A stretch of DNA of 64,000 bases from Podarcis bocagei (taxonomy: Eukaryota). This document shows positions 6,560 through 60,367 of the stretch, piece by piece; the stretch's first letter is position 1, and each line of letters opens with the position of its first letter. The notes beneath the pieces are model-generated. The model was not told where the DNA came from, ran no database searches, and saw only the letters and a program-made list of their open reading frames with translations. Made by a program: the position numbers and the translations under genes. The stretch lies in the NCBI GenBank assembly GCA_964188305.1, contig OZ076886.1. The stretch is one strand, 5' to 3'.

Positions 6560-6738
6560 TGCCGTTTCCGCCCGGCCTGCTGAGGAGGAGCTGTTGGCTG
6601 TTCGCTGGTGCCGCGGAGGGGGAGGGGCCGCGGCCGCTGCTCTGTGGAGCTTGAGCTCTCGGTCCCGCCTGCCGCCTAGGAAACACCGTGGCGCCCAGCA
6701 GGGCCTAGTGCCGGGGGCCCGGGCAACGGGCCGGACAG
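6560..6738 (+). other. SETD5: Probable non-coding exon 1 of SETD5 (5' end approximate)
   Basis: Lies just downstream of the conserved promoter core and ends at donor CAG|GTCAGC (GT 6739). Contains AGGAAACACCGTGGCGCC, similar to mammalian Setd5 exon 1 as recalled. Confidence 0.6.
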
Positions 6739-9700
6739 GTCAGCCAAGGCAAATGAAGAGCAGGAAAAAGGGGGCGTGTGGGGTGAAGAGGGGACACCCG
6801 TTCAAAAGGCGGGAGGCGGGTGGGAAAGAGACCCATGGAGGGGGAGGGGCGGGAAACTTATGGTGGTGGTGAGGGGTTGTTTCTCGGTGGTCCTTCCTCT
6901 GCTCCAGCCCCTTCTCTCACCGCCTCCTTTCAAGCTCCCGCATCTTTCCAGCTGCCCCGGAACTCTCTCCATGCATTCTCTGCCCTGCTGTGGGGGGTTT
7001 AGGGGTGTGGGGGGCGGGGAGGGCGAGGGAGAGAGAAAAGCACCTCAGCCTGGCTCTTCCAGGGGAAGTGGAGCCTCTCCCGCATGTCGGAGGGGAAAGA
7101 AAGAGGTCACACTCCCTGGCCTGCGTTGGACACCCCGGTTTCCCTGCACCTTTGGAGGCATCTGGATGTGAAGAGAGGGGTGCGTGTGAATGTATATACA
7201 TATACATATACGTGTGTGCATATATATCTATATACATACATTCACACGCACTCCTCTCTTTACATCCAGATACCCCCAAAAGTGCATAGGTGTGTGTATA
7301 TATTTCTATATACCTCCCTTTTTTGTGTGTCTGTGTGTGTGTGTGTGTGTGTGTGTATGTGAGAGATTGGGGGTGCGTCCATGAGTGGGAATCCCCGCCG
7401 AGGGCTTCCCGCAGGGAGGGAAGGTGGTGGGACTGTTTTCCATTTCGCTCCCACCCATCCCCCACCTTCCTCGCCGTGGGGGGTGCGGGTGAGCTTGCCT
7501 GGTGCCAGGCGCTGGCGGAGAGCGGGGGCGTCATGGCGAACCTGCGTGTCTGGTCCTGGAGGGGGTGGGAGGGAGAGTGGCCTGTGTGTTGTGAGAGGGA
7601 GAGAATGGGTGGTGGGGGAGGGGTGGTAGTCTGAAGGAACCTCTGAATTCATTCCTGTTTCGGGTTCCCAGGCAGGATTCTCTCGGTGCAGTGTGTATGT
7701 GTGCGTGTGTGGAGCAGGGTCGTGCTGGAGGTGGGGAAGTAGCCGGTCCAATCTTCTGTGGAAAGCCTACTGTGAGAATGTGGGAAAATCCCTTTCTGGG
7801 ACGATGGCTTCCACTTCAAAGCAGCTGTTTGCCAGGAAAGGGTGTGTGTATGTGTGTGTGCGTGCGACCGCCCGTCTGTGCTCCTCTGTGAGTTCACCAT
7901 TGCCTCCCCTCTGCTTCCACCCCTCCTCCTCCATGTGCTGAAGCAGCTTCCCCTGAGCTGCTGCTGCTGCTCCTTCCCTTCCCGCCCCCTCCCTTTCCTC
8001 GGCTGTCTGCTTCTGACTTGCTGGCTCCTTCAGGCAACGGGGGAGGAGGTGTTTGACCTGCATTTTCTGCTTTCTCATGGTGCTTGTGTGGCGATGGTGG
8101 TGCACTTTAATAATCCTCTTCTCCTTTTCCCTTGCCTGCTGCTGGAGGCTGCAGTATGGACCCCCTCCCCCAACTTTTTCATTGTCTGACGTGTGTGCTC
8201 TATCAGGGTACTTTTTTCGGTTTTCTTGCATTGATCTCTGCGTCTTAAGTGGTAACACAGCCCCTTGTAAACACAATAATAGTGCTGTGGGCAAGGTCGT
8301 CATAGTCTACCCCCACTCTTCCCTTTAGCAGCTTGTCCTTGGGGTGCCAGTGGCCAGCTACTTGAAACAGAGCTGCCTTGAACTGAGACAAAAATCCTTT
8401 TTACAGTTTTGGGGAATGGTTTGTTTAGCAATCTGGGAAGTGGTTGGTGAGGTTAGAGAATGTCAGGAGCTTCTTCCTTGCAAAGTACCTAGCTGAGAGA
8501 GGTTTTGGTCTCTGCAGTTAACCAGTGGGGTCTCCTGTACTGTACTTCAGGCAGCAGCCCCTATGCTCAGGGAGATTTTTGCAGAATGGAACAAAATATG
8601 CTATTGGGATTCCTTTTGCTGAGGTTGGTGTTACTTTAAGGAGATAATGGCCCTTGCAGTGTGGCCTCCTGCAGTTTCTCTCCCTGGCCCATTATGTAAT
8701 TGGAGTATTTAAGGCTCACTCAGGCAGAGGCTGTGGGCAGCACAATGAATTGGTTTTGTATTGTAGGGGGATGGGGCCATGGCCTCAAAACCCATGATTT
8801 TTGGCAGTGAAGACATAGGCCTGATTGCAAAAATGTTTTCCAAATGAGCTGTCAACACTTGAGGATATGGGTTACAGACTAGACAAAGACGTACTACTTC
8901 CTTAATGGCGTTCAGGACTCTCCCTTTTCACCTATGAAGGTGACATCAGGCAGTCTGCCCCATCCCCCCCTCCAGCTGGCCCAGGAAGTCGGTTTTGCTA
9001 GCTATGTCTTGCAGCGCAGAGGTGACCGAGGTTGTTGCTTTGCTTTGGATCCTGTGGGTGAACGTTCAGAGCGTTGACAAGCAGCTAATGTTGGCTCTGG
9101 AGCTCTGGTTGCTACGTGAGAAGCTTCAGTAGTGTTGGCTGCTGTCTCCAGGGAAGGACAGCAGCACAACCTCCATTAGTGCTGCACTTAGGAGATGGCT
9201 GGTTCATGCACTGAGATGGGACTCTTCTTTCTGGGGCATGCAAGCTTTCAACTAGGATGATGCAAATTGAGTTTTCACCCATCTCTGTCACAGTCTTTGG
9301 GACTGCTTTTAGGATTTGGCCTGAATATCCAGGGATGTCTGTCTCCTTTATAGCCTTTGCAATTGCAAGAACTGATCTGATCTTTCTGAAGTGGGAGATG
9401 CAGCACTGTGATTACAGTTTGTCTGACTTTAGCTTCCCTTCCAGTAAATCAGAGAGCCAGATGCTTTGCTTATTGTTTGTAGGTCTCTTTCCTCCCCTTA
9501 CATTGCCTGGGCCCCATTTGCCTTATTGACAGGAATTTCTGCTTTGTGCAATGGGTGTGTATAGCAGACACTAGCCTCCTAGCGCTGAGAGGATTTTCCA
9601 TTCAGAGAGTGCAGTCAAAATATGACACATTTTGCAAGTGGCAGCAGAGCCCATTTGAAAGAATGGCCCCTTCCAGCTAGGTACCTGGGCAAAGCATACA

Positions 9701-20943: not shown

Positions 20944-21296
20944 CAGTGGTGCCTCGCAAGACGAAATTAATTTGTTCCGTGAATTTTTTCGTCTAGCGAA
21001 TTTTTCTTCTTGCGAAGCACGGTGTCGGAAAAGTTTTGGAAAAGCTTCAAAAATCGCCAAAAACCTCAAAAAAGGCTACCACACCGCGTTCTATGAGTTG
21101 CTCCTCGAAGTCAAGTCGCAACTGTATTAAGGGTGTTAAGAAAAAGGAAACAAACTTGCAAAAAATGCTAGACGTTTTCGTCTTGCGAAGCAAGCCATAG
21201 GGAAATTCGTCTTGCGAAGCAGCTCAAAAACCGCAAAACCCTTTCGTCTAGCGAGTTTTTCGTCTTGCGAGGCATTCGTCTTGCGGGGCACCACTG
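20944..21296 (+). mobile_element. Tc1/mariner-type MITE, family B
   Basis: TA-CAGTGGTGCCTCGCAAGACGAA ... TTCGTCTTGCGGGGCACCACTG-TA; repeated internal TCGTCT(T/A)GCGA motifs. Confidence 0.9.
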
Positions 21297-21554
21297 TAGT
21301 CACTTTCATTCCAGGGCGGAAGGGTATCTTCTTGAGCGACGGAGCCACTGAGAGGAGCAGGAAGCTTTGCATTTTTAAGACACATTTTTTCTCATGTGAA
21401 TATCTGGCTGGGTGTTTATCCTTTCATGATCTCCAAAGCTTTTTTAAAAAGGTTCCTGAATTGTTCTAGCCATGGCAATGGTGTTGTGTGGGTATGGTTT
21501 TTTACACTATACAATTATGTACTTGCAACAGTCGCACCACCCTTCTACTGTATA

Positions 21555-21792
21555 CAGTGGTACCTCTGATTACGAACTTAATTCATTCTGGAGGTCCGCT
21601 CTTAACCCGAATCCGTTCTTAACTTGAGGCGCACTTTCACTAATGGGGCCTCTCGCTGCCACCGCACCGCCGGCGCACAACTTCCGCATCCCGGGGCGAA
21701 GTTCGCAACCAGGAGCATCTACTTCCGGGTTATTGGAGCTTGTTACCCGAAGCGTTCGTAAGGAGGACGGTACGTCGCCCGAGCTTCCACTG
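21555..21792 (+). mobile_element. Tc1/mariner-type MITE, family A variant
   Basis: TA-CAGTGGTACCTC ... CCACTG-TA; internal AACTTAATTCATTCTGGAGGTCC block related to family A. Confidence 0.82.
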
Positions 21793-24700
21793 TATGCCTA
21801 TTTCAGCTTCTCTGATTCAGCTTAGGGAAGCTAGTTCTGGCTTTTTCAGGGCACATCTCAATGAAAATACCAAATCTGATTTTAGTGAAGCCTGTAGGCA
21901 GTGACTCTTCTTGACCATATAGCCTCCGGCTCTGTGAAAAACTGACACTAATAAACACCTGAAGAGGCCAATGGCACCTGGCACCATAGGAATCGCTTTT
22001 GTGGCCAGCAGCTCATAGGAGTGTTTGTTACTTGTGGAACACACACTGCGCTTTCAAGGAGGCTTTCACATCTTCTCCTTTTGGTGCCCACTGCAGCTTT
22101 GGCTTGTAAAGTTTTTGTTGGCATGATTTTGAGCCTACTAAATAGCCAAAAAGACTTCATTGCTTCTTTGGCCTTGGAAACGTTCAGTAGTCTGCATAGT
22201 GCTGCTACAGTGGAGGTCTATGTCTGACTCCAGAGACATAATTTTTGGGCAGGTCTCTGCTTGTTACTGCTTTACATTAAACCAGTTTAAGGACCCAGCC
22301 TTTTGCATTCCCACACACGGCTTGTACCACTCCCTGGAGTTCCTTACCTGTATATGCATGGCCTTGTTGATCAGTGGTGGGTGGATTTTATCCTTGTTAT
22401 TTTACAAGAACCCCAAGATCTCCCAGCCAGAGCCAGGTGCAAAAGACATAGAATTAGAAGTAGAAAACGGACTGCCTGTGAGCATATTTTGAGTCTAGGA
22501 ATTGATTTTCCGTATGAGAGCTGAACTGAGTTCACGGTCCTTTCACACAAAAGCCCTGCTTAGCTTTCTTCATTTTAGCAGCCTAATTTATGTGGGAACA
22601 GTTGTTTTGTTCTTTAAGAACAAAAATTGGGAGTCATTTAAATGATTCTGATCTATCTTCTGCCCACTCACATTGTATGTAGATTGTGTGAGAAACCTGG
22701 GTTCCAATTAAGGAGGATTTGGAATACTTGGACTTCAGTGCCTCTTAGCATTCGTGTGTGGGAGGGGCTAGGCAACTTTAAAATGGAGCCTCATTTAGGC
22801 TTAATTTGACCCCAGAAACAGTTAATTTCTCCCAAAGATACTGCAGCAAGCTGGGTGCAAGGCCTATACAGATGTGCACAAGCCATTAACAAGCTTTACA
22901 GCAGAGTAACTCACCAACATGCAGTCCTAACTTCTCTGTAGTGAATATGGCTACCCGTTCATCTCCCAGTTGTGCTGTTACATGGTACTTACTGCGTTGA
23001 TGGTTCTTAGAACGTTGACCCCCAAAATCATGTGAGTGATGATGTAAACCTGTTTAGGAGTGCCCAGAAAAGGCTTAAATGTCCATTTGGCAGCCTATGG
23101 ACTGATTCTGTGGCTCCTGAATCATACCAGCACCATCAAGCTTACATTTTGTTATGAGTGCTTCTAACAACATGTCAGACCCTGCAAGATGATGAGAGTG
23201 AGTTTGTGTTAAGTAGCTGATCCCACTTCCCTGTACTGAAATTTTCCAAACGGTTTCTAGTTTACTGTTCCACCCTCCCTGCCCTCTCCCCACCCCCATG
23301 GCAGCATCCTGCAAAACATATACGATCAGTTTGATCGGTCTGAAGGATCATTTGCTGGTAACTTTTAAGGGGAGGGAGGAATAAAATCAGGTTTATAATG
23401 GAGGTAGGGGCTGAACCTTAAGTATAGAGTAGCTGCCACGGCTCCATAATTGCTGCACTGTGTCGTGTTGCCATGGTTCCCAGTGCTGTGTCTCTGCATG
23501 GTTTCTGAGAGTAGGGCCAAGGCAGCCAGTCACAGCAGAGCTGCTGTGTACGTGTTTGGGGAGTTTAGACTTTTACTGACAAGGAAGTGATGGGAGAGAG
23601 CCCTGTGCTTATAGTTAGGGTGTTAGGAAAGGATCTGGGTATTTCCCACCCCATATTGCGTGCGTTTTTATTCCTTTCCTTCCTCCTCAGACAGACTGAG
23701 GTGGGAAGCATTCTAAGGCAGCATAAATGCTTAGTTCCTCCCTCCATCGGTCTTCAGTCACGGGGGCAATGACATGAAATGTGGGATTCCTTCCTCTACC
23801 AAATGGTGGGGTGGGGTAGCTGTGGGGAAGGGAGGCTGCTGCCTTTGGATTGGCTCGGGCGTGTTTTCATCAGAGATCCCCTTGGCTGACTTGCCATCTG
23901 CATAGGCTGTGAATACTTCTCTCTGGCGCAGACCTTGTTCCTTGGGATTGCATCATCTCTGGGAGAGCAGCCAGGTCCGGAGCACTAGTACAAAGACTTT
24001 GTGAAGCAGATGCGGCCTGTTCTGTCTCTGAAGCATTTCTCCTCCTTCCTGCTCATCCTTCCCACAGGATTCCAGAAAGAGAGCTTGCTCTGAGAGCCTC
24101 TCAGTAGGTCAGCTGCCCTTTGGACTCTGAATCCCAGCTGCTTCCTGTACACCTGGCTGATGCAATGTCTGCCTTTGAAATCCCTGCTGGAATTCACTCT
24201 GGAGTGGTTTTGTTTGCCTTTTCTGGGAGTGGCCAAGCAGGCAGAGTAGGCCTGTCACATGACGTCCTTGAATATAAGAAGCCTGTCGCCAGATTTCAAG
24301 ATGCAGAGCTCTTTCCTTTTCCAATCTAGCAACCGGTTCCTGGCAAATTTTGTCAGGCATTGCCTTCTCTTGGTGGCAGATATATATCATGCGCACATTA
24401 CAGTTGCTAGCATTGTAATCGGTAATTTGCTGTGGCCTGTGTGATTGTCCTGGGAATTCTGAAGGGGTTGATCTGAATTTGAGTTCCAGTCCAGCTGAGT
24501 CTGTTCACTGCACCGTTTTTTTATGATTCAGCTGTTTGCATTATTTTTCTCCCAAATGCCATCTACGTAAAATAATTTAGGGAGTGATACTTTACTTGAC
24601 AGGTTTGTAAGGATTCATATTTTTAAAAGCAAAGGCCTGCTCTATTTCCAATAAGGTATTTTACTTTCACATATCCACCACTACCACCTCCCACACACTT

Positions 24701-33100: not shown

Positions 33101-33383
33101 TTACTTCCTTCAATTGTGCAGCCATCTGCCTTCGACTGTTCCCCCTTTCACCACCATGTCAGATATGCCCCTTTCCCCCTGTTCCTCTTGTGTTAAACCT
33201 TGTCCCAAGTGAGCATGAGGGATTTGGGAGATGACTTTGCATCTCATGCACATCTGTGAAGCTCAGGAACTGGGTTTTGGCACTAGGGTTGTCATGAGGA
33301 TCATTCTGAAATAAATCATTACAGAAATGAATAAATGCCTTCCATGCTGCTTTCTTTTCTCATTGGCTGCTGTGGGATTCTAT

Positions 33384-33389
<6 letters not shown>

Positions 33390-33435
<46 letters not shown>
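33390..33435. repeat. (AC)n microsatellite
   Basis: Direct inspection. Confidence 0.97.
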
Positions 33436-33438
<3 letters not shown>

Positions 33439-33755
33439 GTGCTCTGCCTCCCCTACTGGCAGTTTTACCCATGTGACTGTCTTTTGCAAGACAGGCCTGC
33501 GGGCCTCTTGCCTGTGCTTGGCATTCTCTTTTATGGCACGAGGAAATATCTGCATGTGAACCAGGTGGCCATATTTGAGAGGAGATTATGTAAAAGTAAT
33601 GCAGAGGCAAGAGACAACACGCATCCTCTGAAGTTTCTCATTCCTTCAGCCTGCACTGTCCTCAACTTTAGGATGGTTTTGCAGGCAGGGTGAACCATAT
33701 GTCTGTGGCAATGATACACAAAAATGCAGTGCATTGTTTCTTTTCCCCTTGGCAG

Positions 33756-33859
33756 GTTTCCCCATGTCCGTGACGTGTTGGCCGAGGCTCTGCGGCTGCT
33801 CCCCGCCCTTGGAGCCGCCAGTCGCTACCCTTTGGACTCCGTGATCCCTGACAAACGTC
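33756..33859 (+). other. SETD5: 5'-UTR part of the first coding exon (contains uORF 33764-33844)
   Basis: Pyrimidine tract and acceptor TTTCCCCTTGGCAG| at 33755; continuous with the ATG at 33860. Confidence 0.8.
33764..33844 (+). CDS. Upstream ORF, 26 aa: MSVTCWPRLCGCSPPLEPPVATLWTP*
   Basis: ATG 33764 to TGA 33842-33844, same frame as the SETD5 ATG and ending 15 nt before it. Translation is not demonstrated. Confidence 0.6.
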   Translation: MSVTCWPRLCGCSPPLEPPVATLWTP

Positions 33860-33930
33860 ATGAGCATTGCAATCCCTCTGGGAGTCACCACACCAGATAC
33901 ATCTTATTCAGATATGGCTGCTGGATCTGA
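33860..33930 (+). CDS. SETD5: SETD5 coding exon 1 (MSIAIPLGVTTPDTSYSDMAAGS)
   Basis: ACGTCATGAGC start context; donor GA|GTAAGT; 71 nt, phase 2. Confidence 0.96.
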
Positions 33931-36553
33931 GTAAGTTCTGCCTTGCCTGCTAGCGTGTGAAGGGCATGGAATCAGGCCTCGGTGTTCAGACTTGAGCTGT
34001 CCTGCTGAGCCCGGGATAGCAGGGAGTAAGCTAGCTTTGCAACAGATAAACCAGAAAGCAGAGATGGTATCTGGTGCACACATTTGATCGCGACGGAACA
34101 CCAAACAGAAGCACTTCCCCCTTTCCCTCAAATTGCGTCCAAGAAGAGGCACTGTCTAGAATACTGCTTTCCCAGTGATCTTTAATTCACACCTGTTGTA
34201 TCATACCTTGGTTGATAGGTATCTTGCAAGACATGAGCCCTGACGGTACTCTTCTTTTCCTCTCCTGTAGCCTAAGTTGCATGGTGCTGCTGATACAGAT
34301 GGCTGTGTGATGTGGGTAAGGAGGATCTTTCAGGCATCGGGCCTCTTGCCTATCTCAAACTGTTAAGTAGATTTTTCACCCCTTTAGTGTGGCTCTTTTC
34401 CCGAGGGAGGCTTGTAAGGTAGCTTGTGGGAAACTTCCTGCGCCAAAACCCAAATGAAGTGTCTACACTACAGGAAGGAAGATGCCTGGAGTTGAATTGA
34501 TCGTTGAGCTTAGTCAGGCACGGAAAGAGGGTCATGCCTTGCTGATGCTGTTCTGTGCTCCTGCACTTGTCTTCAGCAGTTTCTCCCAAGAATGGAGCAC
34601 TGTGAAGGGCCAGACACACTGTTTGAACCACCTGCTTGACAGACTGTACTCAGGAGACACTGAAAGCTCTGTGTATCTGGCCTCTGTTTGGTGGGCTTTT
34701 GTGAGGCGCTAGCATTCATGAAACACTCCTTTTTCCTGCATCTTTTTGTGTATCTGGATACACGGTGTAGTATATCGTGTCTGGTTTTGTTTCATACCAC
34801 GGACCTGATCAGGCTTTGTTGAGCACCTGTCCAGCTCAGCTTCAATCATACTGCATCTGGAGTATTCTCAGCAAATAAGCGCACTACAAAATAAATGTCC
34901 TTTGCTTTGTTTCCTGTCTAATGTTAGATCTGTTCTGAATATACGTCTCACTTCATAGCTATTTCTGTCAGGTCTTCTTGTTTTGATGACAGTTTTTTGT
35001 GTTTTGTTTTACTGGGAATGTTTAGGATCACATTCCATGATACTGTCAGGTTGCAGTGGCCTTGCGTTCTGTCGTCTTATATATAGAGCCCTGAAAAGGC
35101 TGTAGCTGTTACCCGTCCTGTCCTTGCCCTCCTTGGGAGCGTGGAGGTAGAAGCAGCTATGTTAAGATTGTTTCATAGCACTAGACTTCAGATGCATGTA
35201 GGTAAAGGGTCTGCCAGTCAACGTTTGCTCTGCTATCATGTGCCACCAAACCTTCATGGCCAAAGAGTAGCCACAATTTGAAGAAGGGTCTCTGCTTGAG
35301 TTGTATTAATTTTCAAGAGCAAGCTCCAGGGACTTGGGATGCAAAAGTAGAAATGGGCATGGAAAAGCTACTTTTGTTAGTAGGGTATCAAGAAAGGAAC
35401 ACATTGATTCAAGATTAAGCTTCTATAGGTAGAGGAGTTGCTGGTTTTACCAGTCCCACTGTTTTGAAGATCTCTGTAATTTAATTTAGCACAACAGAGC
35501 AGTAGTTAGGAATGAGGAGTTTGCGGTCATCTTGGAGAGAGACAGGAGTTCCAATAAGCAAGTACCGTGTGGCCACCCGTCCTCTTCCTGGCTGTAGCTT
35601 TTGAAAGTTGACTGCAGTTGCAGAAAGGACATTTCCTGAACCATATCCCTAATGCGTGCTTGCAGCGGCAGCTCCTCCTCCTCTTAGTCCTCCCCCCTCC
35701 TTCCAAAGAGAGCAATTTCTCCTTCTGGCATCAAGGCTTTGGCTTCATCACCTACGCTTTTCCTGTTTCCTTTTCTATAACAAGGACTCCCACAGCCTTT
35801 CACTAATTGCCCATTTTGTACAGTACCGTATTCTGAGTTGATTTTTTTCTGCCACCTTGTGGTGGAATGTTGCAATTTTCGGTCAGTAATTAGTTGGGAA
35901 TTCACCGCATCATCCCATAAGAAAGCAGGGTATCCTGAATATTTTAGTTTGTCCGGAGTTCCTTCCGATCCAGGTCATAGATATTCCTGTAGCTCTTGGC
36001 CTATTTTTGTCAAGTACTCTCAAGAGCTCCCATCACTAGAAAATTGTGTCTCGGCTCCTATCTGTATTGAGCAACTCATTGCATTTGAAGCAGCAGTATG
36101 TAGACGTTGTGGCCTGAAAGGTATTGCCCTTTAAAGTCTGAGGCTGTGGCGGGGTGATCTCAAATTGTATAGAGTTGAGTGGGGATCAGGAGGAGGAGCA
36201 AATCCACGAAGGGTTTAAAGTGAAATGAACAGCTAGCAGAATAATCCAGCGAGCAGCATTGTCAGCAGCTTTTACCTTCCTGTTGCCTCTTGCTGAAGCA
36301 GGGTTGCTCGTATTGCTTATCCGGGATGCCTCATTTTGAGGCAGCTGCCAGTCACTCGCCCTTCCCTAGCCCCTGCTTTATGCAGAATCCGGCCTTCATG
36401 GATTCCATACCTCACTTGCCCCTCAGAAAAGGTATGTCCATTCTCGGCCGGATATCTGTGTGGCATGAGAGAAACTGCTAAGACCTGGCTAATTTTTTTC
36501 TTCAAAGAACCACTTCCTCTACTGATTGGTTCTGCTCTTGGCCCTTTCTGCAG

Positions 36554-36659: not shown

Positions 36660-38358
36660 GTGAGTACCGTCTCTCTTATCTGCAGCCGACTCATCTATTT
36701 TACCCATCCCCTCTCCCTGGCTTGTGCATGATTGAGCTGTATATCTTCTTTGAGGACGGCAGCATTGCCAAGTAACACATGGGCACTGAATTTCTAGCCC
36801 CGCGTTTGTGTTTGTTTAGTGCTTGCAGACAACTTACTGCGAAAGGGAAGTATGGAACTAGAACAGCCTAGTAAACAAGCCCACAAAGTTACTGCATTTC
36901 CAGAAAATCAGCCGGCATGAGAACATAGGCTACCCGCCTCTTAGCAAGACAGTGTTAAAAGAAAGCTTTCTGCCGAGGGAGCTGGCAAGAGGAGTGGTCT
37001 ACCGCTCTTCCGCCGTGTGCCAGTCACAGAGGAAGGGCTGCCTTTCCACTGTGACCAGCACAGAAGGCAAACTGGCTGGTGGAGGAGGAGGAGGACAGAG
37101 TGATGGGCCTGTTCGTTCACCTGCATTGAATACCTGGCCTCCTTTGCCTGCCGAGTGAGTTGTTAAATGCAGGCTTGGACTAGAAGGTGAGGGGGGCATC
37201 TCTTTTTCCCTTTTTGGTCTTTAGCACTGACTGCTCATAGAAACTACTACCCAGGGTAGACCTACCGATTGCAGGTAGATTTTTCTAATGAAGTTCCCCT
37301 CGCCCCTCCCCCAAAAGTGTATTGATAAGCCCCAGTATTTTGAAAGTTGAAAGCATAGGTTTCAGAATCAAGCCAGTTTGAAAGACAGCTTGCAGTTTTT
37401 CTGTGCTTAACAGTGCAGAATGCTTGCATACACATGCAGGTCTCTGCCTTAAGAAAAGCAAGAGGGACCTGCAAGGAAATGTTATGGTGTGGAGTGTGCT
37501 GGCTCAGGTTTTCAGCTGTCCCATTCCATCGTTTTTCATTCTCCATCACTGCCACCCTGTCTACACCTGTCAGCCAGCCAGTATTTCGTGCCCATCGAGA
37601 ATGCTCAGTCCTCACAGGATGGTTTGGGGCATTTTTTTCCATTTTGGGGGTTTGAGGAGGTGGAGTGGGTATACTTATGCTGAACCCCAAACACATTAAA
37701 TTATTGAATTTCTCTGTCAATATCTGTGAGCAGCTCTCATTCCAAACTTGGGGACAGTTTAAAATAACTTCTTTGAACCAGAAAATGACGTATCCAGACA
37801 TTGAGATGCTTATTTCTACCCTATACATATGCATACATACTCTGTCTTCTGGTTCCAGACACTCCATTCTCCCCCTGCATCCCACCCGGTTGCCATTTTC
37901 ACCCCTTAGTCTCCACATTTTGTGCCTTGAAAAGATAGCATAGAGCTGTTTGAGGCGTTTTCCCTGCAGATTTTTTTGGTACTTGTTGCAAGCCCCTGAT
38001 TTCCTCTGAGACTGCTGGTACTTCTTTCTTGTGTGTGGGTAGTGTGGTTTTGTTTCCATTAGCACAAGCATAGGTAGTTCAAATCAGTGTTAGTACATTT
38101 TGCTAAGACGCCTGGATATCAGGGCTTTCTTTATCTGTGGTTGGACTGAGAAAACAATTGCTCCGCCCAGTTTTAGAGAGAGTTCAAAGTTGTAGGTCCT
38201 TGCTCTGTTAGCCAGAGTTCCTGTCGCTCCTCAAATCTGTGCATGTGGTGGTGGGTAGGTTTTGGAAGTGTCTTAGGGCTCACATGTTGTGTAAAGTCAT
38301 GCCTCTTGCTCTCCTCCCCCGCATTCAAAATAAAACTGATGCAAATGTTTGTTTTCAG

Positions 38359-60237: not shown

Positions 60238-60367
60238 NNNNNNNNNNNNNNNNNNNNNNNNNNNNNNNNNNNNNNNNNNNNNNNNNNNNNNNNNNNNNNN
60301 NNNNNNNNNNNNNNNNNNNNNNNNNNNNNNNNNNNNNNNNNNNNNNNNNNNNNNNNNNNNNNNNNNN
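60238..60367. other. Assembly gap (130 N)
   Basis: Run of N. Confidence 0.99.

What the first reader, a model, noticed from the sequence alone, without database searches (positions are those of the whole stretch)
33764..33859. 26-codon uORF in frame with SETD5 and ending 15 nt before its start
Seen: ATG 8 nt into the exon, MSVTCWPRLCGCSPPLEPPVATLWTP-TGA, then five sense codons (TCC CTG ACA AAC GTC) and the main ATG. The short spacing should disfavour reinitiation, and readthrough would give an N-extended SETD5. From memory, the human leader has a same-length uORF at the same position (approximately MSITCWMRLC...WTP*) and the KMT2E leader has one ending TP*; this needs verifying. A conserved W-T-P-stop end would suggest a sequence-dependent stalling peptide or microprotein controlling a haploinsufficient chromatin regulator.
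Basis: partly seen in the sequence, partly recalled or inferred. Interest (0 to 1): 0.75.

Follow-up and report, generated by a model that had tools for sequence, protein, structure and literature searches.

The report
Conserved upstream reading frame before SETD5
The short reading frame just ahead of the SETD5 start codon is real and has kept its start, stop and length from bony fish to reptiles, so it probably damps how much of this dosage-sensitive chromatin regulator is made; its amino acids drift, so it is unlikely to encode a working small protein.

Summary
A 26-codon ATG uORF (33764-33844, TGA) starts 8 nt into the start-codon exon of SETD5. It ends 15 nt before the main ATG and is in frame with it.

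I recovered orthologous leaders from 11 other sources: 3 squamate-like contigs, 4 from an unidentified second tetrapod group, and 4 teleosts. All 8 tetrapod versions keep the same start, the same stop, 26 codons and the 15-nt spacer. Three teleosts keep the same start and TGA with 25 codons. One teleost transcript is frameshifted to 20 codons.

The arrangement is not vertebrate-wide. In teleosts the stop lies 94-100 nt from the main ATG and the frame relative to SETD5 varies. This rules out readthrough as an old function.

The peptide is not under clear selection. pN/pS is 0.45-1.2 and no lower than in the other frames, conserved columns show no codon periodicity, and Trp-24 is tetrapod-only. 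Constraint sits on the nucleotides around the weak start and on the last codons plus the stop.

Mammals and human were not examined.

Most likely this is a position-conserved, translation-dependent repressive uORF, a new member of a known kind. This scan reached a similar reading for an SCN8A uORF elsewhere in this genome.

The parts
33735..33755 (+). Polypyrimidine tract and CAG acceptor of the start-codon exon
   Evidence: Read. The last ~35 nt of the intron are alignable between the squamate-like and the second tetrapod group, and similarity becomes complete from the AG onward. Use of this site was not shown by reads.
33756..33763 (+). First 8 nt of the exon, giving the weak context of the upstream ATG (C at -3, T at +4)
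   Evidence: Invariant in 8 tetrapod sequences. C at -3 and no G at +4 in all 12 sequences, including teleosts.
33764..33844 (+). uORF: ATG, 26 codons, TGA
   Evidence: Same length and boundaries in 8 tetrapod sequences. 25 codons with the same start and the same TGA in L025, L026 and L023. 20 codons in L001.
33764..33787 (+). Conserved block 1: uORF codons 1-8
   Evidence: No variable site among 8 tetrapod sequences, synonymous positions included. Partly kept in teleosts: ATG-TCC-GTG and Arg-8.
33788..33832 (+). Variable middle of the uORF: codons 9-23
   Evidence: 8 variable sites at codon positions 1,2,3,2,2,3,1,3. Replacements at residues 9, 12, 16, 18, 19, 21 and 22.
33833..33847 (+). Conserved block 2: codons 24-26 (Trp-Thr-Pro), TGA and the next 3 nt
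   Evidence: Codons 24-26 and the stop are invariant in 8 tetrapod sequences, and the following TCC is identical in all 8. Teleosts keep [Thr/Ser]-[Pro/Leu]-TGA-T.
33845..33859 (+). 15-nt in-frame spacer between the uORF stop and the main ATG
   Evidence: Length is fixed in 8 tetrapod sequences, but 5 of 15 sites vary. In teleosts it is replaced by a 94-100 nt (112 nt in L001) C/T-rich stretch.
33860..33931 (+). SETD5 main start codon and first coding part (23 codons plus 2 nt); donor GTAAGT follows at 33932
   Evidence: tblastn of fish SETD5 P0019. 10 of 72 sites vary among tetrapods, 8 of them at third positions.
6560..6739 (+). Putative non-coding exon 1 in the CpG island, donor at 6739|6740, without any ATG (boundaries inferred)
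   Evidence: CpG island; sequence read. If it splices directly to 33756, the uATG is the first AUG of the mRNA. Not shown by reads.

Best explanation
This is a position-conserved, cis-acting regulatory uORF of SETD5 that works through being translated, not through its peptide.

Inferred mechanism. Scanning 43S complexes meet an upstream AUG in a weak context. A fraction initiates there, translates 26 codons and terminates at UGA. In tetrapods that stop is only 15 nt from the main AUG. Reinitiation should therefore be poor, and a terminating 80S cannot coexist with a 48S sitting on the main AUG. SETD5 synthesis would then depend on leaky scanning past the weak uAUG. That makes output damped and sensitive to start-codon stringency and initiation-factor status. 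uORF termination upstream of many exon junctions could also expose the mRNA to NMD.

Shown here: the anatomy; conservation of start, stop, length and weak context from teleosts to reptiles; and the lack of coding-type selection.

Inferred, not shown: that the uORF is translated, that it represses, and the leaky-scanning route.
For: The anatomy was read directly.

The uATG is kept in 12 of 12 leaders. The aligned TGA is kept in 11 of 12. Length is 26 codons in 8 tetrapod sequences and 25 in 3 teleosts.

The only indel inside the uORF between tetrapods and three teleosts is 3 nt. Immediately after the stop, an ~80-100 nt length difference is tolerated.

The weak uAUG context (C at -3, T or A at +4) is kept in all 12 sequences. 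The main AUG has G at -3 in all.

The uORF lies in mature mRNA in teleost transcript contigs L001, L023 and L026.

Nucleotide constraint is strongest at the start (0 of 32 variable sites) and at the stop (0 of 12). The neighbouring CDS varies at 8 of 23 third positions. The chance of 0 of 11 uORF-end third positions varying at that rate is 0.009.

The peptide is not selected: pN/pS is 0.45-1.2 and no lower than in the other frames, and invariant columns by codon position are 9/24, 10/24 and 9/24.

From established knowledge, not tested here: reinitiation efficiency falls with short intercistronic distance (Kozak 1987, 2001), and conserved uAUGs are generally repressive.
Against: The synonymous sites of codons 1-8 and 24-26 are frozen. 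That also fits a nucleotide element unrelated to translation.

One teleost transcript (L001) has a 1-nt deletion and a different uORF end, so the exact stop is not indispensable, unless that is an assembly error.

The short spacer central to the proposed mechanism is not conserved in teleosts, so at least the quantitative behaviour must differ between lineages.

Species identities of the Logan contigs are unknown. Mammals and amphibians were not sampled.
Confidence: 0.55

Rival explanations
1. Peptide-dependent pause at termination. The C-terminal residues (hydrophobic-x-Thr-Pro) with Pro-tRNA in the P site and UGA in the A site slow peptide release. The paused ribosome blocks the main AUG 15 nt downstream, perhaps in response to a cellular signal such as eIF5A or polyamine status.
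For: The last three codons, the stop and the next 3 nt are invariant in 8 tetrapod sequences. They are also invariant, by antisense-ORF threading, in 9 clusters of the second tetrapod group and 5 squamate-like clusters. [Thr/Ser]-Pro-UGA is also present in two of four teleosts. Pro-stop ends are known to slow termination in UL4 uORF2 (PMC9648851). The paralogue KMT2E has a translated uORF ending Thr-Pro-stop.
Against: Trp-24 is not kept in any teleost. Pro-26 is Leu in L023. L001 has a different end altogether. The UL4-type stall needs a terminal Pro-Pro, and this uORF ends Thr-Pro. The invariant end is frozen at synonymous sites too, so it does not point specifically to the amino acids. There is no coding-type signature anywhere in the uORF. 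No footprint data are available.
Confidence: 0.17
2. A conserved nucleotide element (a protein-binding RNA or DNA site, or a splicing signal of the exon) that happens to contain an ATG and a TGA. Under this reading the reading frame is incidental.
For: Conservation shows no codon periodicity. Synonymous positions of the two end blocks are more conserved than those of the adjacent CDS. An open frame of this size is expected in 59-71% of shuffles of this C/G-rich sequence. An ACGT-core motif sits in codons 3-5 of the tetrapod versions.
Against: An ATG in a leader is normally selected against. Here it is kept at the same place in 12 of 12 sequences over the teleost-tetrapod split, while the codons just after it (4-7) change freely in teleosts. 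The in-uORF indel is a multiple of three, whereas large indels begin right after the stop. No stable or covarying RNA structure was found: z -0.34, covariation term -0.96. No Rfam family matched. The ACGT motif is not kept in teleosts.
Confidence: 0.2
3. The uORF encodes a stable 26-residue microprotein with a function of its own in trans.
For: The first three residues, Arg-8, Gly-11, a Pro-Pro-Leu-Glu patch and Val-20 recur between tetrapods and two teleosts: 15 of 26 and 13 of 26 identical. Two changes are synonymous only in this frame (AGG/CGG Arg-8, TTG/CTG Leu-16).
Against: pN/pS is close to 1 and not frame-specific. There are eight replacements in the middle among close relatives. Only 9 of 26 residues are identical in L023, and L001 is frameshifted. 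No peptide evidence is known to me, and no paper in the library mentions one.
Confidence: 0.04
4. Programmed readthrough of the uORF stop yields an N-terminally extended SETD5.
For: In all 8 tetrapod sequences the uORF is in frame with SETD5, and the 5 spacer codons contain no stop.
Against: In teleosts the uORF is out of frame in L025 and L026. In L023 it is in frame but separated by 99 nt that, on my own reading, carry an in-frame stop. The stop context is UGA-U, not the known UGA-CUAG readthrough context (established knowledge). The spacer varies at 5 of 15 sites with amino-acid changes.
Confidence: 0.02

Closest known systems
Human cytomegalovirus UL4 (gp48) uORF2
   Same: A short uORF (22 codons there, 26 here) with a weak start context. 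It ends in Pro-stop and acts in cis on the downstream ORF (PMC9648851).
   Different: UL4 uORF2 needs a terminal Pro-Pro and a specific peptide. Here the end is Thr-Pro, the peptide drifts, and no stall has been shown.
Conserved-peptide uORFs that sense metabolites (AMD1 MAGDIS, AZIN1 uCC with Pro-Pro-Trp end, fungal arginine attenuator peptide; from established knowledge)
   Same: Vertebrate-wide or wider conservation of a uORF in a dosage-critical gene, a weak or non-canonical start, and the strongest constraint next to the stop.
   Different: Those families show amino-acid-level conservation. This uORF shows none that can be separated from nucleotide conservation. No ligand is suggested.
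KMT2E (MLL5) leader uORF MHRTP, in the paralogue of SETD5
   Same: It ends Thr-Pro-stop. It is translated in human Ribo-seq (141 P-sites, 72% in frame) and is classed as conserved to vertebrates (PMC10032668 Table S4).
   Different: 5 codons against 26. No sequence homology between the two leaders was tested here. Two shared residues can be chance.
Position-conserved, peptide-independent repressive uORFs
   Same: Start, stop and length are kept across vertebrates while the amino acids drift, and the start context is weak.
   Different: Nothing essential differs. The special points here are the very short in-frame spacer in tetrapods and the frozen end blocks.
DENR/MCTS1-dependent reinitiation uORFs (PMC7494916)
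   Same: The identity of the last sense codon before the stop is a conserved feature and could set the fate of the post-termination 40S.
   Different: The dependence described there is for ATG, GCG and CTG as last sense codons. Tetrapod SETD5 has CCG; only teleost L023 has CTG. The 15-nt spacer makes reinitiation unlikely anyway.

Membership tests
Position-conserved regulatory uORF | Upstream ATG kept at the homologous position across distant species | tested here: met
   12 of 12 leaders from squamate-like, second tetrapod group and teleost sources.
Position-conserved regulatory uORF | Stop position and length kept | tested here: met
   26 codons and TGA in 8 tetrapod sequences. 25 codons and the same TGA in 3 teleosts. 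One exception, L001, has 20 codons.
Position-conserved regulatory uORF | Lies in the mature mRNA leader | tested here: inconclusive
   Shown for teleost transcript contigs L001, L023 and L026.
Position-conserved regulatory uORF | Ribosome occupancy and repression of the main ORF | not testable with these tools
   No Ribo-seq or reporter data were accessible.
Conserved-peptide (nascent-peptide arrest) uORF | Amino-acid-level purifying selection specific to the uORF frame | tested here: not met
   pN/pS is 0.45-1.2 in frame 0, against 0.38-2.2 and 0.21-2.0 in the other frames. Invariant columns by codon position are 9/24, 10/24 and 9/24.
Conserved-peptide (nascent-peptide arrest) uORF | Critical C-terminal residues invariant across the whole range | tested here: not met
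   W-T-P only in tetrapods. Teleosts have Q-T-P, Q-S-P, G-T-L or a frameshifted end.
UL4 uORF2-type stall | Terminal Pro-Pro before the stop | tested here: not met
   The end is Thr-Pro. The requirement is stated in PMC9648851.
Stop-codon readthrough extension | uORF in frame with the main ORF, with an open, coding-like spacer across species | tested here: not met
   Frame relative to the main ORF is 1, 1, 0 in the three intact teleost uORFs (0 in L001), with spacers of 94-126 nt. The tetrapod spacer varies at 5 of 15 sites.
Structured cis-regulatory RNA | Unusually stable or covarying secondary structure, or an Rfam match | tested here: not met
   MFE -28.2 kcal/mol against a shuffle mean of -27.1, z -0.34. 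RNAalifold covariation term -0.96 with 2 compensatory pairs. No Rfam hit at E<=1.
DENR/MCTS1-dependent reinitiation uORF | Last sense codon ATG, GCG or CTG | tested here: not met
   CCG in all tetrapod versions; CTG only in L023. Codon list from PMC7494916.

The most novel reading that the evidence does not exclude
SETD5 and its paralogue KMT2E may both carry descendants of one uORF that predates the vertebrate genome duplications. Its essential part would be a Thr-Pro-UGA end acting as a termination-pause sensor (for example of eIF5A/polyamine or release-factor status) that sets the dose of this chromatin-regulator family. The frozen last codons plus stop in tetrapods would be the footprint of that sensor.
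Probability: 0.07. Interest if true: 0.8.

Novelty: new member of a known kind. Interest (0 to 1): 0.4.

Why it matters
SETD5 is haploinsufficient: loss of one copy causes intellectual disability and autism-spectrum features. Non-coding 5'UTR variants of SETD5 have already been accepted as diagnoses (PMC11998461).

A uORF kept for over 400 million years, immediately in front of the start codon, is a plausible built-in brake on SETD5 output. This has three consequences:
- Variants that destroy, strengthen or extend it become candidates for interpretation in unsolved cases.
- Blocking the uORF is a conceivable way to raise SETD5 protein from the remaining good allele.
- The tetrapod/teleost difference (15 nt in frame versus about 100 nt of C/U-rich spacer) offers a natural experiment on how spacing sets uORF strength.

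The finding is not surprising in kind, because conserved uORFs are common in developmental regulators. No paper in the searchable library describes this one.

Tried and rejected
1. Literature. Four full-text searches found no paper discussing a SETD5 uORF. The ESUCA animal CPuORF paper has no SETD5 or KMT2E in its text and its supplements are not held. The GENCODE Ribo-seq ORF paper is not held. Two further supplements are not held. The stored Sandmann 2023 supplements have no SETD5 entry, but at least file 5 was cut when stored.

2. Named tetrapod SETD5 proteins. The representative search gave only fish full-length proteins and exon fragments. The word search with a pipefish SETD5 listed only teleosts. 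I tried building a tetrapod-leaning profile by aligning window exons to a fish scaffold, but MAFFT stretched the fragments and I abandoned it.

3. What did work. Searching with the exon C frame and with the antisense frame across the uORF exon. Gene callers had called that antisense frame on genomic Logan contigs.

4. P0121 (Takifugu) is not on record.

6. I first used the 'AGSE' N-terminal end to argue that the second group was non-mammalian. That was a splice-junction artefact and I withdrew it (exon ends 33931).

7. A hairpin I saw by eye (CCGAGG/CCTTGG, with a U-to-C change in the second group) did not survive RNAalifold and the shuffle test.

8. Codon-model likelihood tests in the other frames were not possible because of stops. 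I used Nei-Gojobori counts instead.

Full report
OBSERVATION

- A polypyrimidine tract and CAG end at 33755, and the exon begins at 33756.
- An ATG at 33764 opens 26 sense codons giving the peptide quoted in the finding.
- TGA is at 33842-33844. Fifteen nucleotides (five sense codons) follow, and the main ATG is at 33860 in the same frame.
- The main frame encodes the SETD5 N-terminus. The remaining SETD5 exons, including the SET domain, follow on the + strand to the end of the window.
- Correction: the exon ends at 33931. The donor is GTAAGT at 33932, and codon 24 is split to give Asp.
- The upstream ATG has a weak context (C at -3, T at +4). The main ATG has G at -3 and A at +4.
- The CpG island at about 5-7.5 kb holds a probable non-coding exon 1 with a CCAAT box, no ATG and a donor at 6739|6740. 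If it splices directly to 33756, the uATG is the first AUG of the mRNA. This is inferred.

HOW COMPARISON SEQUENCES WERE OBTAINED

No vertebrate genome collection was directly searchable.
- An exon query against the representative library gave two full-length fish SETD5 proteins and exon fragments.
- A word search with one of the fish proteins listed only teleosts.
- A search with the exon C frame found one squamate-like genomic contig, P0154/L002.
- The most productive step was a search with the antisense frame that runs across the uORF exon. Gene callers had called that frame on genomic Logan contigs, and it returned 14 clusters.

Resulting set, in SETD5 sense:
- Window.
- Squamate-like: L002:2922-3002 (+), L027:1466-1546 (-), L028:3024-3104 (-).
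- Second tetrapod group, with unrelated introns: L003:3024-3104 (-), L009:794-874 (-), L017:3024-3104 (-), L022:2580-2660 (-).
- Teleosts: L025:2829-2906 (Oncorhynchus clarkii genome), and the transcript contigs L026:341-418, L023:488-565 and L001:38-100.

The organisms of the Logan contigs are not given. Each cluster occurs on at most 12 contigs, which argues against human or mouse origin. I could not identify the second group further. Mammal-type fragments P0155-P0157 were deliberately not fetched because they could be human.

WHAT IS CONSERVED

All 8 tetrapod sequences have the uATG 8 nt into the exon, 26 codons, TGA, a 15-nt spacer and the in-frame arrangement.

Threading the antisense-frame proteins onto the window reproduced the known cases. 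That frame shares its wobble positions with the uORF frame. The threading adds two more squamate-like variants (P19L and A21T) and shows one identical peptide in nine clusters of the second group.

Among the tetrapod sequences:
- The 8 leader nucleotides plus codons 1-8 have no variable site (0 of 32).
- Codons 24-26 plus the stop have none (0 of 12).
- Codons 9-23 have 8 variable sites of 45.
- The spacer has 5 of 15.
- The first 72 nt of the CDS has 10, eight of them at third positions.
- Flanking introns are essentially unalignable beyond about 35 nt.

Teleosts:
- In the cutthroat trout genome the exon again starts 8 nt before the uATG.
- The three teleost transcripts join different upstream exon sequence at exactly that point. 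This supports the acceptor.
- Trout, L026 and L023 have 25-codon uORFs with the same start and the same aligned TGA followed by T.
- The single indel relative to tetrapods inside the uORF is 3 nt.
- L001 has a 1-nt deletion in a C run and ends at a TAG after 20 codons. Whether that is real or an assembly error cannot be told from one contig.

WHAT IS NOT CONSERVED

In teleosts the stop is 94-100 nt (112 nt from the aligned TGA in L001) from the main ATG. The difference is a C/T-rich insertion. The uORF frame relative to SETD5 is 1, 1 and 0 in the three intact teleost uORFs (L025, L026, L023) and 0 in L001. The 'in frame, 15 nt' design is therefore a tetrapod feature, and readthrough to an extended SETD5 cannot be an old function.

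At the peptide level:
- Trout shares 15 of 26 residues with the window, L026 shares 13, and L023 shares 9.
- Recurrent residues are Met-Ser-Val at the start, Arg-8, Gly-11, a Pro-Pro-Leu-Glu patch, Val-20 and the final Pro.
- Trp-24 is tetrapod-only.
- The ends are Q-T-P, Q-S-P and G-T-L.

IS THE PEPTIDE UNDER SELECTION?

- Nei-Gojobori counts give pN/pS of 0.45-1.2 in the uORF frame. The two other frames give 0.38-2.2 and 0.21-2.0, so there is no frame-specific signal.
- Columns invariant across the five lineages are spread evenly over codon positions: 9/24, 10/24 and 9/24.
- Among tetrapods the variable sites of the uORF fall on codon positions 1,2,3,2,2,3,1,3, while the adjacent CDS has 8 of 10 at position 3. 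The Fisher test on these small numbers gives P = 0.14.
- Including the threaded variants, I count by hand at least 8 amino-acid replacements and 4 synonymous events in codons 9-23. This is close to the neutral expectation.
- The third positions of codons 1-8 and 24-26 are frozen: 0 of 11 vary, against 8 of 23 in the CDS, P about 0.009. Constraint there acts on nucleotides, not only on amino acids.
- An open frame of this length is expected in 59-71% of composition-matched shuffles.
- The meaningful facts are therefore retention of the ATG, of the stop, and of a length that changes only by a whole codon. They are not openness or peptide identity.
- Two substitutions (AGG/CGG at Arg-8, TTG/CTG at Leu-16) are synonymous only in this frame. 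That is suggestive but too few to weigh.

OTHER READINGS TESTED

- RNA structure: the 98-nt leader folds no better than shuffles (-28.2 against -27.1 kcal/mol, z -0.34).
- RNAalifold on ten sequences gives -12.3 kcal/mol with a covariation term of only -0.96 and two compensatory pairs.
- Rfam finds nothing at E<=1 in 33300-33853.

Reads:
- The run search listed RNA-seq runs under the same species label as the best holders (organism A); the run holding most of the stretch is labelled organism D.
- There is thus no direct evidence here for expression, the acceptor site or ribosome occupancy in this species.

LITERATURE

- No paper in the searchable library discusses a SETD5 uORF.
- SETD5 5'UTR splice variants are accepted causes of disease (PMC11998461).
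Table S4 of PMC10032668 lists a human KMT2E uORF MHRTP with 141 P-sites, 72% in frame, conservation class 'vertebrata'.
- UL4 uORF2 stalls through a terminal Pro-Pro and has a weak start context (PMC9648851).
- DENR/MCTS1 dependence is tied to ATG, GCG or CTG as the last sense codon (PMC7494916).

MOST LIKELY MECHANISM (confidence about 0.55)

This is a translation-dependent, peptide-independent repressive uORF. A fraction of scanning complexes starts at the weak uAUG. In tetrapods they terminate 15 nt before the main AUG, where reinitiation is inefficient (Kozak's intercistronic-distance rule, established knowledge). By footprint geometry, a terminating 80S and a 48S on the main AUG exclude each other; this is inference. 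SETD5 is then made mainly by leaky scanning. Output is damped and responds to start-codon stringency. NMD coupling is possible.

The frozen nucleotides around the start and the stop fit selection on initiation and termination efficiency. They equally leave room for two rivals:
- a Thr-Pro-UGA termination pause (about 0.17);
- a non-translational nucleotide element (about 0.2).

A trans-acting microprotein (about 0.04) and readthrough (about 0.02) are disfavoured.

COMPARISON AND NOVELTY

It works like the common class of position-conserved uORFs. It fails the defining tests of conserved-peptide uORFs, of the UL4 Pro-Pro stall, of readthrough extensions, of structured RNA elements and of DENR-type uORFs (see the membership table).

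It is a new member of a known kind. What is specific to it is the gene (a haploinsufficient neurodevelopmental regulator), the depth of conservation (teleost to reptile), the contrast in spacer design between tetrapods and teleosts, and the shared Thr-Pro-stop end with the paralogue KMT2E. I could not test whether that shared end reflects homology.

LIMITS

- Twelve sequences, most of unknown species.
- No mammals, amphibians, cartilaginous fish or KMT2E leaders.
- Small substitution counts.
- No expression or translation data.

Noticed in passing
L026:321-332, L023:469-480, L001:19-30: Teleost SETD5 leaders carry a second, 3-codon mini-uORF (ATG, two codons, TAG). Its stop ends exactly at the exon junction in front of the uORF exon, so two uORFs sit 7-8 nt apart in the spliced mRNA. 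Exon 1 of this window shows no counterpart.
   Followed up: partly
L025:2907-3000, L026:419-518, L023:566-664, L001:115-226: Teleosts have an 80-110 nt C/T-rich (polypyrimidine) stretch between the uORF stop and the SETD5 start codon. Tetrapods have only 15 nt there. It could serve reinitiation or bind pyrimidine-tract proteins.
   Followed up: no
proteins P0158-P0184; window 38323-38358 for comparison: In many teleosts the intron just upstream of the 'DHNYG' exon is open. It encodes a conserved Met-Gln-Gln-Ser-Ser-Val-Val-Cys-Cys-Gln lead-in, and some gene models (P0023, P0029) start there. This looks like a fish-specific alternative first exon that would bypass the uORF leader. The squamate has no ATG there.
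   Followed up: no
window 33770-33778 and the main start region: ACGT-core motifs. A TGACGTG-type site lies in uORF codons 3-5 and is invariant in tetrapods but absent in teleosts. A CRE-like half palindrome overlaps the main start codon and is kept from teleosts to tetrapods. Possible DNA- or RNA-level sites; untested.
   Followed up: no
window 33649-33891 minus strand; L002:2822-3049: An antisense open frame across the uORF exon is called as a 'gene' on many Logan contigs. It is most likely an artefact of prokaryote-style gene calling on a C/G-rich conserved exon. It shares wobble positions with the uORF frame, which made it useful as a handle for fetching orthologues.
   Followed up: yes
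L028 (SETD5 sense on minus strand), first 10 codons of SETD5: One squamate-like contig has two amino-acid changes (A4E, T10A) in the otherwise invariant SETD5 N-terminus, and L9F in the uORF.
   Followed up: no
window 33380-33437: A (CA)n microsatellite of about 55 nt lies about 320 nt upstream of the uORF exon.
   Followed up: no
window 60238-60367: A run of 130 N inside a SETD5 intron.
   Followed up: no
window 21001-22000: A local rise of the CpG observed/expected ratio to 0.89 in the long first intron, away from the main CpG island at 5-7.5 kb. Possibly an alternative promoter or a repeat.
   Followed up: no
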